A stretch of 63,752 bases of DNA, filler included, from Octopus bimaculoides (lineage: Eukaryota), in assembly GCF_001194135.2 (NCBI RefSeq). It is 9 parts of 9 records of this genome, joined end to end, with 100 filler letters (N's around TTAATTAATTAA, not from the genome) between each part and the next. Parts side by side here need not be neighbours in the genome. Positions count along the whole stretch, not along the records: positions 47,683 to 53,211 come from NC_068992.1; 8 more parts are not named here. One strand, written 5' to 3'. Shown piece after piece: positions 47,358-53,311 of the stretch. The stretch's first letter is position 1, and the number at the start of each line of letters is the position of its first letter. Both the position numbers and the translations under genes were made by a program. A model generated the notes under the pieces. The model did no database searches. It was not told the DNA's origin and saw nothing but the letters and a program-made list of their open reading frames with translations.

Positions 47358-49166
47358 TATATATAGATATATAGATATATATATATATAGATATGCAGGG
47401 CAGGGAATCGTCAATTAGTAATAAAATTAATAATTAACAATTTTGCCGGGTAGCTCAGTATGAAAAAAAGCTCAGTATGAAATCAGTAGTTCTTTGACTG
47501 CTATTTCTGAATTCTCAGTATGTTGGAGAAGCAGGTTACTGTCAATCCCTATATATTTATGATTATATATATATATATATATNNNNNNNNNNNNNNNNNN
47601 NNNNNNNNNNNNNNNNNNNNNNNNNNTTAATTAATTAANNNNNNNNNNNNNNNNNNNNNNNNNNNNNNNNNNNNNNNNNNNNCATGCATATATATATACA
47701 TACACACACATATATATAATATATACATACAAAACAGGCAGACAGACAGACGGATGAACTGACGATTGATGGATGGATAGATAGCTAGATGCATAGATAT
47801 ACATACATACATACATACATAATACATACATACATACATACATACATGCGTAAGTTAATAATCACAATGATTAGGTTGATAATGAGAATGATTGCAAAGT
47901 AATAGTAAATTAATATGACAACAACCACAGCAACAACATCAAAATCAATACACAACAACAACAACAACAATAGTTGCTGTAAAGAACTACAATAACATGG
48001 AGGAGAAAGAAAAAGAACTTTGCTGTTATAAATAACAATGATGATGAGGATGGTAGTGGTGGTGGTGGGGGATTATGTTGATGATGATGACGATGATGGT
48101 GATGATGAGGACAACGGCCACCACCACCACCACCACTACTACAATGATGATGATGATGGTGATGATGATGGTGATGATGATGTTGATGATGATGGTGATG
48201 ATGATGGTGATGATGATGATGATGATGATGACGATGATGATGATGATTATGGTCGTGGTGATGATGATGATGGTGGTGGTGGTGGTGATGATGATGATGG
48301 TGGTGGTGGTGGTGATGATTGTGGTGGTGGTGATAATAAAGTGTATGATGTGTGGATGAAGAGGAGAAGAATGATGAAAATGAAGANNNNNNNNNNNNNN
48401 NNNNNNNNNNNNNNNNNNNNNNNNNNNNNNNNNNNNNNNNNNNNNNNNNNNNNNNNNNNNNNNNNNNNNNNNNNNNNNNNNNNNNNNNNNNNNNNNNNNN
48501 NNNNNNNNNNNNNNNNNNNNNNNNNNNNNNNNNNNNNNNNNNNNNNNNNNNNNNNNNNNNNNNNNNNNNNNNNNNNNNNNNNNNNNNNNNNNNNNNNNNN
48601 NNNNNNNNNNNNNNNNNNNNNNNNNNNNNNNNNNNNNNNNNNNNNNNNNNNNNNNNNNNNNNNNNNNNNNNNNNNNNNNNNNNNNNNNNNNNNNNNNNNN
48701 NNNNNNNNNNNNNNNNNNNNNNNNNNNNNNNNNNNNNNNNNNNNNNNNNNNNNNNNNNNNNNNNNNNNNNNNNNNNNNNNNNNNNNNNNNNNNNNNNNNN
48801 NNNNNNNNNNNNNNNNNNNNNNNNNNNNNNNNNNNNNNNNNNNNNNNNNNNNNNNNNNNNNNNNNNNNNNNNNNNNNNNNNNNNNNNNNNNNNNNNNNNN
48901 NNNNNNNNNNNNNNNNNNNNNNNNNNNNNNNNNNNNNNNNNNNNNNNNNNNNNNNNNNNNNNNNNNNNNNNNNNNNNNNNNNNNNNNNNNNNNNNNNNNN
49001 NNNNNNNNNNNNNNNNNNNNNNNNNNNNNNNNNNNNNNNNNNNNNNNNNNNNNNNNNNNNNNNNNNNNNNNNNNNNNNNNNNNNNNNNNNNNNNNNNNNN
49101 NNNNNNNNNNNNNNNNNNNNNNNNNNNNNNNNNNNNNNNNNNAACAACAATAACAACAACATCAGC

Positions 49167-49210
<44 letters not shown>

Positions 49211-49215
<5 letters not shown>

Positions 49216-49370
49216 TCAAAATAACTTCTTTTTTTATTTATTTTTGAAGAAATTGTATGTTACGGGTTACGATATTTGTAATTTATTAGCAATATTATTA
49301 TTATTATTATTATTATGTTGTTGTTGATTTGAAGAAAGAAGAAGAAAAAAAACAACATAATAATAATAAT

Positions 49371-49404
<34 letters not shown>

Positions 49405-49488
49405 TTGCTAATAAATTACAAATATCGTAACCCGTAACATACAATTTCTTCAAAACTAAATAAAAAAAAAGAAGTTATTTTGATATTA
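49211..49488. repeat. Near-perfect long inverted repeat (hairpin)
   Basis: 49211-~49322 is the reverse complement of ~49353-49488; arms differ by one substitution and T-run/TAA-run lengths; spacer about 30 nt. Confidence 0.9.
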
Positions 49489-49859
49489 AATTCTTACATC
49501 CATACATATACAACATACATACATGCGTACATACATACATCCATGCATACATATATGTATATATTTTAGAGAGTTCGTCTGCAGGAACAGGTTTGTAAGA
49601 TATGAAGTTAAGTACTCAATACTTCCGGGAGTAGATTTATAAACACCCGCATATATATAGATACATATATACATATGAACATACATACACATATACATAC
49701 ACACTTATAAACACACATAAACACATACATATACACACCCATATATACATACACGCATACACACTTATACATACTTATACACACTTATACATACGTACGT
49801 ACATACAAACATATACACATTTATACGTACATACATACATACATACATGTGCATTTATG

Positions 49860-50019
49860 AAAAAAATAAAATAAACGGTGAAAGAAATAACATCGAAAAC
49901 AAAACCAGCAAAAACAAGCGCAAAAAATTCAGAAGCGAAAGAGAGAAAGAAAGAAAGAGAGAAAGAAAGAAGAAAGAAGATATTTTAACGGACGAAGGAG
50001 ACGACAGAGGCATGAGAAG
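49860..50019 (+). promoter_or_regulatory. Probable purine-rich 5' UTR/leader of the nAChR-like gene
   Basis: Non-SINE A/G-rich stretch directly upstream of ATG 50020; contains an upstream ATG at 50012. Transcription start not identifiable. Confidence 0.3.
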
Positions 50020-50232
50020 ATGAGGTACGTTTGGCTGGTGTTAAACTTTCTTCTGTGTACTTGTACCCTATTAAGTTGGGCCCCGGGATTAATAAGGGCC
50101 AGCGAGGGGTCGAAAGGAGCATATCACCATATTATGTGTGATAAAAACTACAACAAACTGATCAGACCAGCCGGACTTAACAACCGCCTCGTTGTACGAC
50201 TCGGGATCAGGATTTCACAAATTCTCAAAGTA
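50020..50232 (+). CDS. First coding exon of a nicotinic acetylcholine receptor-like (Cys-loop pentameric ligand-gated ion channel) subunit; partial gene
   Basis: Translates to MRYVWLVLNFLLCTCTLLSWAPGLIRA|SEGSKGAYHHIMCDKNYNKLIRPAGLNNRLVVRLGIRISQILKV: hydrophobic signal peptide, then YNKLIRP and V.LGI..SQIL.V, matching the nAChR N-terminus pattern (YNRLIRPV.N.SD.LTVK.GLRLSQLIDV). Followed by GTAAGT at 50233-50238, phase 0, at the conserved nAChR intron position just before the DEKNQ exon. Confidence 0.88.
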
Positions 50233-50411
50233 GTAAGTTGCATACGTTGATGTATTTCTTTCTTTTTTTTTTTTTATTTACTACCACCACCACCGCCGCC
50301 GCCACCACCACCACCACTACTACTACTACTACTACTGTTAGTGTTGTTGTTCTTCTTTTTGTTGTTATTTCCCTTGTTGTGGGTATTTTTTTTTTCATTG
50401 TTATTACTTAT

Positions 50412-50628
50412 AAGACGTCGAACTGGCAGAGGCGTTAACACGTCGGACAAACTGCTTAGCAGCATTTCGTCCGTTTTCACGCTCTGAGTTCAAATCCCGC
50501 TGTGGCCGACTTTGCCTTTCATCCTCTCAGGGTCGATGTAATAGCCACTAGTTGAGGAAAAGGGGCCCATGTAATCAACTAGCCCATCTTGTGCCCCAAA
50601 ATTTCAGGCCCAGTACTTATAGTAAAAA

Positions 50629-50693
<65 letters not shown>

Positions 50694-50916
50694 CAAAGTG
50701 GTAAGTGATCGCAATCGTTAGCACGCCGGTCAAAATGTTCAGCGACATTTTGTCCGAGTTTACAATCTGAGTTCAAACTCCGCCCAGGTGAACTTTCTTT
50801 TTCATTCTTTCGGGGTCGATAAAATAATTATCAGTCAATTACTGCGGGTCGATGTAATCGACTTACCCCTTCCCTCCAACCCCCGAAATTTCTGGCCTTG
50901 TGCCAAAATTTGAAAC
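50412..50916 (+). mobile_element. Two SINE family A copies separated by (ATT)n in nAChR intron 1
   Basis: About 50412-50625 and 50695-50916. Confidence 0.8.
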
Positions 50917-51239
50917 AATCATTACTTTCCCATGCTCTGGGAATGGCAGAGTAATCTGGGATTTTTGTGTGGGGGGGGGGGGTTACCCCCGGATTACTCT
51001 ACGCGGACTGCCCCGCTATTGGGGATTCTATTTATTTATTATTTCTTTCTCTACTTCCCATTATATAGCCTCTGTTATATCCTTTCATGTGGTAATATCT
51101 CCCCTTGATTGATGTTAACCCCACATGTGTTTGTTAGTGCTTCTTTTTTTTTTGTTGCAGTTGTTTTTGTGTGTGTGCTATAACTGGTCCTTCGATATTG
51201 TCCTCCATGTTTTAAGCCCTTCTGGCCAATAATAGAAAT

Positions 51240-51278
51240 TATCATCATTATTATCATTATTATTATTATTATTATTAT

Positions 51279-51331
<53 letters not shown>

Positions 51332-51341
51332 ATTTTATTAC

Positions 51342-51377
<36 letters not shown>

Positions 51378-51482
51378 AATTATTATTATTATTACTACTA
51401 CTACCACTATTTTTATTACTATTATTATTATTATTAATATAATTATTATAATTATCATTATTATTATTATTATTATTATTAT

Positions 51483-51544
<62 letters not shown>

Positions 51545-51553
51545 TTTTAATAC

Positions 51554-51604
<51 letters not shown>

Positions 51605-51950
51605 CATCATTATCATTATTATTATTATTCATATATCTGTTTTTCCATCAACATGTTTTGTATCAATTTATTTATTTATTTCCTAACTTCTGTTTTCATA
51701 TTCTTTTCATTTACCCTTATTGTTGTAACGTCCCCTTTCCATCACTTGCAAACAACACCCTCCCACCACCACCACCACCACCACCACCCACCCACCCCAT
51801 TGTGTATGCGTTCGTGTTTGATCCTTTGACAATATTCTTCATGTCTTGCACCCTTGTGGCCAATAAAAGAAATCATTAGAGTCGTTGCTGTCACTATGTC
51901 ATCTTTCTCCTTCTTTCCTCTTCCTTCTCTTCTTTTTTTTCTTCTTATTG

Positions 51951-51998
<48 letters not shown>

Positions 51999-52166
51999 GT
52001 CATCATCATCATCGTCATCATCATTATCATCATCATTGTCATCATCATTGTCATCATATTGTTCTCATCTACGCTTCTCTTCCCGTCTTCTTAACTTTTT
52101 CTTTTGGTCGTTACTTAGTACTATTATTATTATTATTATTATTATTATTGAGTGAGAGAGCAGTGC

Positions 52167-52205
<39 letters not shown>

Positions 52206-52234
52206 CATTATTATCATCATCATCATCATCATCA

Positions 52235-52307
<73 letters not shown>

Positions 52308-52308
52308 C

Positions 52309-52358
<50 letters not shown>

Positions 52359-52480
52359 CAGTACAAGCTGTTGCTTTCTCTTTTAACTTATTTCTATAGC
52401 TGCTGCTGCCGCTGCCGCTGCTGCTACTCCAGCTGCTGTTGCTACTTCCTCTGTCTTTCTCATAATTATTGTTGCTCTTC
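51240..52480. repeat. Compound trinucleotide microsatellite field (ATT/ACT/CAT/AGT)
   Basis: Direct reading. Similar fields at 14560-15330, 18820-18900, 32640-33000, 42650-42830 and 48040-48390; dinucleotide and tetranucleotide (TA, CA, TACA, TCTA) tracts occur throughout. Confidence 0.95.
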
Positions 52481-52814
52481 TTGTTGTTGTTTAACCCTAA
52501 GACAACACCCAGAACGAGCACACATGGCGCAGATCTGATCGAAGTCGTGCCAACCGTGGATTATTTTAAGTGTATCTAGGAATAAACTAAACAATTGTGC
52601 TCTTATAATTTATTTTAGGCAGTGAGAAGTAAAATTAAATGAGATTTGGCTGCTATTTCAAGCATGTCAAGCGACCATACAGAGACTTCATAACTGTCCC
52701 GTTATAATTGTTTCTGGTGTTCTTTAATTGTCGGTGGAGGTCACGGTGAGAGAGGATCATAAGTTTGAATTTTGCGTGTTTGAATGTTTTCGTTATGGCT
52801 GACATTGTTTACAG

Positions 52815-52869
<55 letters not shown>

Positions 52870-53311
52870 CTTCTCTAAAGTCGGCCCCAAACCCACCAGA
52901 GCTATGCTCAAAGGGGCTCCGGCCATAGCCACCCCGTCAAGTATTTTCTTAGGGTACACTGAAAGTCAGACGAATATTATACAAATTCTAACATGTGGAA
53001 TGACCACGTGCAGGGTCATATACACACGTACATACATACATACATACATACATACACACATACATACATACATACATGCATGCATGCATGCATACATACA
53101 TAATGCATACATACATACATACATACATACATACATACATACATACAGGCATTGACAGGAAGATACACATGTACAAATATATGCATATATATACATATAT
53201 ATTTATGTATANNNNNNNNNNNNNNNNNNNNNNNNNNNNNNNNNNNNNNNNNNNNTTAATTAATTAANNNNNNNNNNNNNNNNNNNNNNNNNNNNNNNNN
53301 NNNNNNNNNNN

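What the first reader, a model, noticed from the sequence alone, without database searches (positions are those of the whole stretch)
50020..50238. Lone first exon of a divergent nicotinic acetylcholine receptor-like subunit
Seen: a signal peptide, YNKLIRP and LGIRISQILKV ending at a phase-0 GTAAGT donor. Established: this is the N-terminus of Cys-loop channels, and octopuses carry an expanded, partly atypical nAChR-like family that includes sucker chemotactile receptors. Atypical features here: the first helix reads SKGAYHHIMCDKNY instead of the usual A/EKRL..DL....Y; it has an extra Cys in the mature ectodomain; and the loop after RP (AGLNNR) is one residue shorter than the insect alpha pattern (VGNNSDR) and has lost the N-x-S/T sequon. 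Signal peptide and first helix share one exon. Inference: a lineage-specific, possibly non-cholinergic or anion-type subunit. The retained SQIL.V strand suggests it is closer to canonical nAChRs than the most diverged chemotactile receptors.
Basis: partly seen in the sequence, partly recalled or inferred. Interest (0 to 1): 0.7.

Follow-up and report, generated by a model that had tools for sequence, protein, structure and literature searches.

The report
First exon of nicotinic-receptor-like gene
This is a real but ordinary gene fragment: the first coding exon (signal peptide, first helix, first strand) of a somewhat divergent member of the large nicotinic acetylcholine receptor family, and the rest of the gene lies beyond the edge of the piece.

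Summary
ATG 50020 opens a 71-codon reading frame that ends at 50232 and is followed by GTAAGT (50233-50238). The peptide is truly homologous to the N-terminus of nAChR-type Cys-loop subunits. It scores 66 bits against an exon-1 profile built without it, while 2000 shuffles score at most 8. Its best E-value is 3e-6 in an exhaustive search of 1.84 billion proteins. The donor lies at an intron position shared by at least 121 of 126 invertebrate homologues, so the exon belongs to the intron-containing class of the family. Published accounts describe chemotactile receptors as intronless. Identity is 46% where that group shares 77.5% among its members, the N-x-S/T sequon is missing, there is an extra Cys, and the loop is one residue shorter. 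A signal peptide and helix on one exon is normal for invertebrates. The exon is 'lone' only because the piece ends about 3 kb into the intron. Nothing in this exon shows ligand or ion selectivity, so the non-cholinergic or anion-type idea is untested. Species, orthology and expression could not be established. The finding is a plausible new member of a well-known, heavily expanded family and is of low interest.

The parts
50020..50232 (+). Coding part of exon 1 of an nAChR-family subunit gene (71 codons, ATG to the last codon before the donor)
   Evidence: Sequence and ORF. 66.1 bits against an independent exon-1 profile, versus at most 8.1 for 2000 shuffles. phmmer best E=3.1e-6 over 1.84e9 proteins. 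PF02931 residues 42-71 align to profile positions 10-40.
50020..50100 (+). Predicted signal peptide (residues 1-27: n-region MR, hydrophobic core YVWLVLNFLLCTCTLLSW, c-region APGLIRA). The cleavage site is inferred near G23/L24 or A27/S28.
   Evidence: Read from the sequence. It aligns with the signal peptides of the homologues. The YNK motif starts at residue 44; in homologues the median is about 41. AF2 predicts a helix at residues 2-24 with pLDDT above 90. No dedicated signal-peptide predictor was available.
50104..50151 (+). N-terminal alpha1 helix region (EGSKGAYHHIMCDKNY), divergent from the consensus DAKRLYDDLLxxxxY. It contains the extra Cys40 (50137-50139).
   Evidence: Alignments A1 and A2 and the column-by-column comparison. 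The hydrophobic positions are kept as A34, Y35, I38, M39 and Y44. AF2 predicts a helix at 29-41.
50149..50169 (+). YNKLIRP motif (helix end and start of the alpha1-beta1 loop). It is fully retained and conserved in 95-100% of the homologues, residue by residue.
50170..50187 (+). alpha1-beta1 loop AGLNNR: one residue shorter than in the homologues and without the N-x-S/T glycosylation sequon
   Evidence: The sequon is present in 122 of 126 homologues. The gap column appears in the alignment.
50188..50232 (+). beta1 strand region LVVRLGIRISQILKV (consensus LxVxLGLRLSQLIDV)
   Evidence: V59, G62, R64 and Q67 are invariant and retained. The D-to-K change is at residue 70.
50233..50238 (+). Splice donor GTAAGT, phase 0, at the conserved intron position between beta1 (…Q-x-I-x-V) and the DExNQ micro-exon
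   Evidence: 121 of 126 homologous ORFs matched the motif and read through as V[SRC] at exactly this codon; three more show the same on inspection. The DNA shows GTAAGT in L001 and GTGAGT in L002 at the same codon. The spliced Mya arenaria protein continues IIDV|DELNQ.
50239..53211 (+). Start of intron 1 (incomplete, cut by the edge of the piece). It consists of microsatellites and two SINE-like copies (50433-50543, 50716-50826). It holds no exon 2.
   Evidence: Six-frame inspection. tblastn and regex scans. A splice-aware scan for the 15-codon exon gave a best score of 8/15, no better than the shuffles (maxima 8-11), while the L002 control scored 15/15. Pfam found no families in the other ORFs. 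Repeats.
49891..50019 (+). Probable 5' UTR or promoter-proximal region. It is an AG-rich low-complexity stretch, open in frame but without an upstream in-frame start. An out-of-frame uATG at 50012 ends at TGA 50021-50023.
   Evidence: The transcription start was not determined, so this assignment is an inference.

Best explanation
The feature is the first coding exon of a nicotinic acetylcholine receptor-family (Cys-loop, pentameric ligand-gated channel) subunit gene. The gene is of the ancestral, intron-containing type.

The exon supplies four parts:
- the start codon and a cleavable signal peptide, which sends the nascent chain into the ER;
- the N-terminal alpha1 helix, which caps the extracellular domain;
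- the alpha1-beta1 loop;
- the beta1 strand.

Transcripts would be spliced from the GTAAGT donor at 50233 to a downstream exon starting with a 'DExNQ..TTNxW'-like sequence. In a homologous contig (L002) that exon is a 45-nt micro-exon. Here it lies beyond the end of the piece.

Shown: homology, the exon boundary at a conserved phase-0 intron, retention of all 11 positions that are invariant in alignment A2, and divergence from the nearest (alpha-like 1) group.

Inferred: that the gene is intact and expressed, and that the product assembles into a pentameric channel.

Not inferable from this exon: alpha versus non-alpha status, acetylcholine binding, and cation versus anion selectivity.
For: - Sequence and ORF.
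- The window peptide scores 66.1 bits against a profile of homologous exon-1 peptides built without it; the best of 2000 shuffles scores 8.1.
- The exhaustive search gave 11 nAChR-type N-termini at E from 3e-6 to 6e-4, including Mya arenaria ACH1-like WAQ98332.1.
- PDB hits are exclusively nAChR subunits. For the peptide alone these are beta2 chains at E about 0.6; for the profile, beta2 at 1.4e-8 plus beta4, delta, alpha2, alpha4 and alpha7.
- PF02931 is the only Pfam family hit by the 71-aa peptide, at the expected N-terminal profile positions 10-40.
- All 11 invariant columns of A2 (Y35, Y44, N45, K46, L47, R49, P50, V59, G62, R64, Q67) are retained, as are 14 of 25 columns that are at least 90% conserved. 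About half of the 11 differences are conservative: I/L, M/L, L/I, A/V, S/A.
- The donor sits at the same codon as in at least 121 of 126 homologues and in loci L001 and L002.
- The position of the start Met relative to the YNK motif matches the homologues: residue 44 here, median about 41 there.
- Intron-rich molluscan nAChR genes keep conserved intron positions (PMC6896357).
Against: - No transcript, orthologue or full-length protein carrying this exon was recovered, so expression and intactness of the gene are unproven.
- The exon is markedly more divergent than members of the nearest group: median 46% identity here against 77.5% among them. Non-conservative changes occur at five strongly conserved positions (R33G, L34A, D37H, N53L, D70K). 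That could reflect relaxed constraint.
- The exonic side of the donor (GTA|GTAAGT) does not match the MAG consensus.
- An out-of-frame uATG lies 8 nt upstream of the start codon.
- No exon 2 lies in the 2,973 bases downstream.
Confidence: 0.72

Rival explanations
1. The exon is an orphan or pseudo-exon. It would be a relic first exon left by a partial duplication or by decay of an nAChR gene. It is still open by chance or youth, but no longer part of an expressed, functional gene.
For: - Divergence is unusually high relative to the nearest group, with non-conservative changes at five positions that are at least 90% conserved. The otherwise near-universal glycosylation sequon is lost.
- No orthologue or transcript was found.
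- The surroundings are dense with microsatellites and SINE-like repeats, and there is an assembly gap.
- No exon 2 was found within about 3 kb.
- Many expanded molluscan nAChR copies show no or low expression (PMC6896357).
Against: - The frame is intact over 71 codons with a proper start and a well-formed signal peptide.
- All 11 A2-invariant positions are retained, and the hydrophobic pattern of the helix is kept.
- The GTAAGT donor is perfect at the conserved position.
- The negative database results are weak. The word-indexed searches returned only short proteins, and the exhaustive search sees only one representative per 50% cluster (note).
- An intron longer than 3 kb is unremarkable.
Confidence: 0.2
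2. The exon is the 5' end of a cephalopod chemotactile receptor (CR or CR-like), the sucker 'taste by touch' branch of the nAChR family.
For: The peptide is divergent in the helix and the loop.
Against: - CRs are described as intronless retrogenes (PMC11526382; PMC13174522). This exon ends at the ancestral phase-0 intron.
- PDB searches with the peptide or the exon-1 profile return only canonical nAChR chains. No chain named as a chemotactile receptor appears at E<=10.
Confidence: 0.04
3. The exon is an alternative first exon of an nAChR gene that also has another, more canonical first exon. That would give two N-terminal isoforms.
For: This is only circumstantial. The exon is self-contained (start, signal peptide, conserved donor) and divergent. 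No canonical partner was seen or excluded, because the piece is short.
Against: No second homologous exon lies in the 5.5-kb piece. No evidence for alternative first exons appeared among the homologues examined.
Confidence: 0.05
4. The feature is a chance open reading frame with a fortuitous YNKLIRP-like motif.
For: Pfam and PDB single-sequence E-values are not significant on their own: 0.077 and about 0.6.
Against: - 66.1 bits against the independent profile, versus at most 8.1 for 2000 shuffles.
- E=3e-6 against 1.84e9 proteins.
- The boundary coincides with a conserved donor.
Confidence: 0.005

Closest known systems
Protostome 'acetylcholine receptor subunit alpha-like (1)' / nAChR-alpha1-type subunits. 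Examples: Mya arenaria ACH1-like WAQ98332.1, and Plakobranchus ocellatus, Thrips palmi, Amphibalanus amphitrite and Araneus ventricosus alpha-like (1).
   Same: - Same exon architecture: Met, signal peptide, alpha1 helix, YNKLIRP and beta1 in one exon.
- Same phase-0 GT donor after the …Q-x-I-x-V codon.
- All 11 A2-invariant residues shared.
- These are the best-scoring relatives in every search.
   Different: - Only 37-56% identical (median 46%) over the 41-residue mature part, where group members share a median 77.5% across phyla.
- The helix reads SKGAYHHIM instead of AKRLYDDLL.
- There is an extra Cys40.
- The loop is one residue shorter and lacks N-x-S/T.
- IDV is replaced by LKV.
- It is therefore not a one-to-one orthologue of this group, as far as one exon can tell.
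Vertebrate neuronal nAChR beta-2 subunit (PDB 5kxi_B, 6ur8_B)
   Same: It is the only solved structure family hit by the peptide alone. YNKLIRPA is identical, and the alignment runs over the helix end, the loop and beta1.
   Different: The match is weak (E about 0.6, 13.9 bits) and one residue shorter in the loop. From my own knowledge, vertebrate genes put the signal peptide on a separate exon.
Cephalopod chemotactile receptors (CRs; octopus CRT1 type)
   Same: They belong to the same superfamily, having diverged from nAChRs. They form an expanded, atypical family in cephalopods (PMC11526382).
   Different: CRs are reported to be intronless, whereas this exon keeps the ancestral intron. No CR chain appears among the PDB hits.
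Expanded molluscan nAChR repertoire: 78 genes reported in Octopus bimaculoides, 99-217 in bivalves, and 15 clades including anion-type and Cys-less clades
   Same: A divergent family member in a mollusc-like genome is exactly what these surveys describe (PMC6896357, PMC13174522).
   Different: The clade cannot be assigned from 71 residues. Most of the expansion is intronless or intron-poor, while this copy retains at least the first ancestral intron.

Membership tests
Cys-loop pentameric ligand-gated channels, nAChR branch (Pfam PF02931 + PF02932) | N-terminal signal peptide followed by the alpha1 helix, the Y-N-K/P-x-x-R-P motif and the beta1 strand, homologous to known subunits | tested here: met
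   66.1 bits against an independent exon-1 profile; shuffles reach at most 8.1. phmmer best E=3.1e-6 over 1.84e9 proteins. Alignments. AF2 predicts helices at 2-24 and 29-41.
Cys-loop pentameric ligand-gated channels, nAChR branch (Pfam PF02931 + PF02932) | Score above the Pfam gathering threshold for Neur_chan_LBD (26 bits) | tested here: inconclusive
   The peptide scores 12.8 bits, E=0.077. Canonical exon-1 peptides covering the same 40 of 216 profile positions also stay below the threshold at 21.3-25.8 bits. The fragment is too short for this test.
Cys-loop pentameric ligand-gated channels, nAChR branch (Pfam PF02931 + PF02932) | Ancestral phase-0 intron between beta1 (…QLIxV) and DExNQ | tested here: met
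   GTAAGT at 50233. The same codon boundary occurs in at least 121 of 126 homologues and in loci L001 and L002. The spliced Mya protein continues with DELNQ.
Cys-loop pentameric ligand-gated channels, nAChR branch (Pfam PF02931 + PF02932) | The eponymous Cys-loop (C-x13-C) in the extracellular domain | not testable with these tools
   It is encoded by downstream exons, which are not in the piece 47683-53211.
Cys-loop pentameric ligand-gated channels, nAChR branch (Pfam PF02931 + PF02932) | Four transmembrane helices M1-M4, and the M2 selectivity filter (cation versus anion) | not testable with these tools
These lie in downstream exons outside the piece.
Cys-loop pentameric ligand-gated channels, nAChR branch (Pfam PF02931 + PF02932) | Acetylcholine-binding aromatic box (loops A-F) and vicinal cysteines in loop C (alpha subunits) | not testable with these tools
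   These lie in downstream exons outside the piece.
Protostome alpha-like 1 (nAChR-alpha1-type) orthologue group | High conservation of the mature exon-1 peptide (median 77.5% pairwise, 5th percentile 64%) | tested here: not met
   The window against the homologues gives a median of 46.3% and a maximum of 56.1%.
Protostome alpha-like 1 (nAChR-alpha1-type) orthologue group | N-x-S/T sequon in the loop after RP | tested here: not met
   It is present in 122 of 126 homologues and absent here, where the loop reads AGLNNR.
Cephalopod chemotactile receptors (CRs) | Intronless (retrogene) coding sequence | tested here: not met
   The coding sequence is interrupted after codon 71 by an intron at the ancestral position. 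The CR gene structure is taken from PMC11526382 and PMC13174522.
Cephalopod chemotactile receptors (CRs) | Altered, hydrophobic ligand pocket and expression in sucker sensory epithelium | not testable with these tools
   The pocket residues lie in missing exons, and no expression data were available.

The most novel reading that the evidence does not exclude
The exon is the 5' end of an expressed, lineage-specific, intron-containing nAChR-like subunit. It would be distinct from both the conserved alpha-like subunits and the intronless chemotactile receptors. Its missing downstream exons would carry a non-cholinergic pocket or an anion-selective pore, which would make it a second, independent route from neurotransmitter receptor to a new function in this lineage.
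Probability: 0.1. Interest if true: 0.5.

Novelty: new member of a known kind. Interest (0 to 1): 0.15.

Why it matters
It matters little as it stands. Molluscs, and octopuses in particular, are already known to carry dozens to hundreds of diverse nAChR-family genes, so one more divergent 5' exon is expected.

The modest value is practical. The exon gives a precise anchor (ATG 50020, donor 50233) for recovering and annotating a full gene whose N-terminus is unusually diverged for a copy that still keeps the ancestral intron. Placement of that full gene would show whether such intron-containing copies contribute to the functional diversification so far attributed mainly to intronless retrogenes.

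Tried and rejected
- Word-indexed protein search with the peptide found no candidate. I later judged this weak negative evidence. The same tool listed only short proteins and omitted the longer members of its own query alignment (note).
- Exact look-up of the 76-aa read-through ORF in public assemblies found nothing on record.
- The metagenome contig scan for relatives gave 522 pattern matches, none confirmed by tblastn.
- A search for exon 2 inside the piece found nothing. I used six-frame inspection, tblastn with two exon-2/3 peptides, motif regexes and a splice-aware 15-codon scan. The positive control on L002 scored 15/15.
- A Pfam scan of nine other non-repetitive ORFs in the piece found no families. 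The 119-aa stop-to-stop frame containing the exon added only three non-significant hits besides PF02931.
- Rfam gave only sub-threshold miRNA-family hits on (ACAT)n microsatellite. ARAGORN found no tRNA, so the SINE-like repeats were not confirmed as tRNA-derived.
- Searches for the peptide in the supplements of two nAChR survey papers and in the full-text library found nothing. The van Giesen 2020 paper is not held.
- I tried to identify the organism of the closest relative through its run accession SRR5023901. It is not in the literature library.
- P0004 is a 698-aa bacterial repeat protein that hits only YHHIMCDKNY-like repeats. I rejected it as a chance match.
- AF2 on the isolated 71 residues supports only the two helices. 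The strand region has low confidence, as expected for a fragment, so I did not run a fold search.

Full report
**Observation**

The piece (47683-53211) contains one convincing coding feature. An ATG at 50020 opens a frame that reads MRYVWLVLNFLLCTCTLLSWAPGLIRASEGSKGAYHHIMCDKNYNKLIRPAGLNNRLVVRLGIRISQILKV. Its last codon is at 50230-50232 and is followed directly by GTAAGT at 50233-50238. Read through, the frame stops five codons later.

Everything else in the piece is non-coding. It comprises tri- and tetranucleotide microsatellites, a 756-N assembly gap (48387-49142), two copies of a SINE-like repeat (50433-50543 and 50716-50826), and an 88-nt inverted repeat next to the gap. Nine other non-repetitive ORFs have no Pfam match. 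Rfam gives only sub-threshold miRNA-family hits on (ACAT)n, and ARAGORN finds no tRNA.

**Is it more than chance?**

Single-sequence tests are weak.
- PF02931 (Neur_chan_LBD) is the only Pfam family hit by the 71-aa peptide, at E=0.077 and 12.8 bits. It aligns to the expected N-terminal profile positions 10-40.
- The only PDB hits are nAChR beta-2 chains at E about 0.6, with YNKLIRPA identical.

This weakness comes mostly from fragment length. Canonical exon-1 peptides from homologues reach only 21-26 bits with the same model, also under the 26-bit cut-off.

The stronger tests are decisive.
- An exhaustive phmmer search of 1.84 billion representative proteins returned 12 hits at E<=1e-3, the best at 3.1e-6. 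Eleven are N-termini of nAChR-type subunits and one is a spurious bacterial repeat protein.
- An HMM built from those homologous exon peptides without the window sequence scores the window peptide at 66.1 bits. 2000 shuffles of the peptide give a maximum of 8.1.

Homology to the nAChR N-terminus is therefore established.

**Anatomy**

By alignment the exon encodes the following.
- A signal peptide, about residues 1-27. AF2 predicts a helix at 2-24 with pLDDT above 90.
- The alpha1 helix, about residues 29-44. AF2 predicts a helix at 29-41.
- The YNKLIRP motif, residues 44-50.
- The alpha1-beta1 loop, AGLNNR.
- The beta1 strand, LVVRLGIRISQILKV.

All 11 columns that are invariant in alignment A2 are retained: Y35, Y44, N45, K46, L47, R49, P50, V59, G62, R64 and Q67.

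**The exon boundary**

Of the 126 homologues fetched, 121 matched a motif for the end of beta1 and then read on as V-S, V-R or V-C. That is the translation of GTnAGn or GTnTGn, meaning gene callers read through a GT donor at exactly this codon. Three more that missed the motif pattern show the same on inspection.

DNA of two homologous loci confirms this. L001 has …GATGTG|GTAAGT and L002 has …GACGTT|GTGAGT, against …AAAGTA|GTAAGT in the window. The one spliced homologue, Mya arenaria ACH1-like WAQ98332.1, continues IIDV|DELNQVMTTNVW. In L002 the next exon is a 45-nt micro-exon, DEKNQIMTTNVWLEQ. It has AG and GT flanks and lies 1.47 kb downstream.

The window's donor therefore sits at a widely conserved phase-0 intron of the family. 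A signal peptide and helix sharing one exon is the normal invertebrate arrangement, not an oddity.

**Why the exon is 'lone'**

The piece ends 2,979 bases after the exon end. A splice-aware scan for the 15-codon exon over the 2,973 bases after the donor hexamer found nothing better than 8/15, no better than the shuffles (maxima 8-11). The L002 control scored 15/15. tblastn and motif scans were also negative. The simplest reading is that intron 1 is longer than 3 kb.

**How divergent is it?**

The nearest relatives are the protostome 'acetylcholine receptor subunit alpha-like (1)' / nAChR-alpha1-type subunits. Named examples come from a sea slug, a clam, insects, a barnacle and spiders.

- Over the 41-residue mature part, those homologues are a median 77.5% identical to each other (5th percentile 64%).
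- The window peptide is a median 46% identical to them, with a maximum of 56%.
- It differs at 11 of 25 columns that are at least 90% conserved.
  - Six of these changes are conservative: S/A, I/L, M/L, A/V, I/L and L/I.
  - Five are not: R33G, L34A, D37H, N53L and D70K.
- It lacks the N-x-S/T sequon found in 122 of 126 homologues.
- It has a Cys in the helix, seen in 1 of 126.
- Its loop is one residue shorter.

Two cautions apply. First, the comparison set is the best-scoring slice of 2778 profile hits, so it is biased toward canonical sequences. Second, from general knowledge of vertebrate subunits, the helix and the D position of 'IDV' vary widely across the family as a whole.

**What it is not**

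Chemotactile receptors are described as intronless retrogenes (PMC11526382; PMC13174522). The bulk of molluscan nAChR expansion is likewise intronless or intron-poor, whereas intron-rich genes keep conserved intron positions (PMC6896357). This exon keeps the ancestral intron. In the PDB, only canonical nAChR subunits match the peptide or the exon-1 profile. That argues against a CR and for the intron-containing branch.

**What cannot be said**

Every determinant of ligand recognition and ion selectivity lies in exons outside the piece. This covers loops A-F, the Cys-loop, the loop-C cysteines and M2. The proposal of a non-cholinergic or anion-type subunit is therefore untested.

I could not confirm the source species. 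I also could not find an orthologue, an annotated protein or a transcript. These negatives are weak for two reasons. The word-indexed search listed only short proteins and omitted longer members of its own query (note). The exhaustive search sees only one representative per 50% cluster.

**Verdict**

I am about 97% confident that this is a genuine nAChR-family first coding exon at a conserved intron. It most likely belongs to an intact, divergent, intron-containing family member whose remaining exons lie downstream of the piece (about 0.7). The main rival is an orphan or decaying exon (about 0.2).

O. bimaculoides alone is reported to have 78 nAChR genes, and the molluscan family has been surveyed at the scale of 3,586 sequences in 15 clades (PMC6896357, PMC13174522). 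On that background this is an ordinary find: at most a new member of a known kind, and of low interest.

Noticed in passing
window 50433-50543 and 50716-50826 (+): Two same-orientation copies of a SINE-like repeat lie in the intron, 73% identical over 111 nt. Each has a tRNA B-box-like GAGTTCAAA(T/C)CCCGC and shared downstream motifs (GGGTCGAT…, CCC(C)AAAATTTC(A/T)GGCC). Neither ARAGORN nor Rfam recognises a tRNA.
   Followed up: partly
window 49229-49316 and 49381-49468: An 88-nt inverted repeat, 99% complementary with a 64-nt spacer, lies just after the assembly gap. It could be a MITE-like element, a palindromic microsatellite structure or an assembly artefact.
   Followed up: no
window 48387-49142: A run of 756 N (an assembly gap) sits inside the piece, flanked by long (ATT/ATC/GAT)n-type microsatellites. 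Part of the upstream region of the gene is therefore unsequenced.
   Followed up: no
window 50012-50023 (+): An out-of-frame upstream ATG lies 8 nt before the start codon (ATGAGAAGATGA). Its stop codon TGA overlaps the main ATG. It could be a minimal uORF if the 5' UTR extends that far.
   Followed up: no
window 49491-49854 and 53020-53211 (-): Rfam 'mir-297 / mir-466 / mir-3149 / mir-1277' matches (up to 56 bits, gathering 75-100) all fall on (ACAT)n-type microsatellite. They are low-complexity artefacts.
   Followed up: yes
L002 9787-10056 and 11523-11567: An unnamed ENA contig carries a canonical alpha-like exon 1 (donor GTGAGT) followed 1.47 kb later by the 45-nt micro-exon DEKNQIMTTNVWLEQ. 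This makes a useful template for what the missing exon 2 should look like.
   Followed up: partly
tool behaviour: The word-indexed homologue search listed only proteins of at most 126 aa. It omitted longer members of its own query alignment (P0001, P0002, P0012). Negative results for full-length proteins from that tool should not be trusted.
   Followed up: partly
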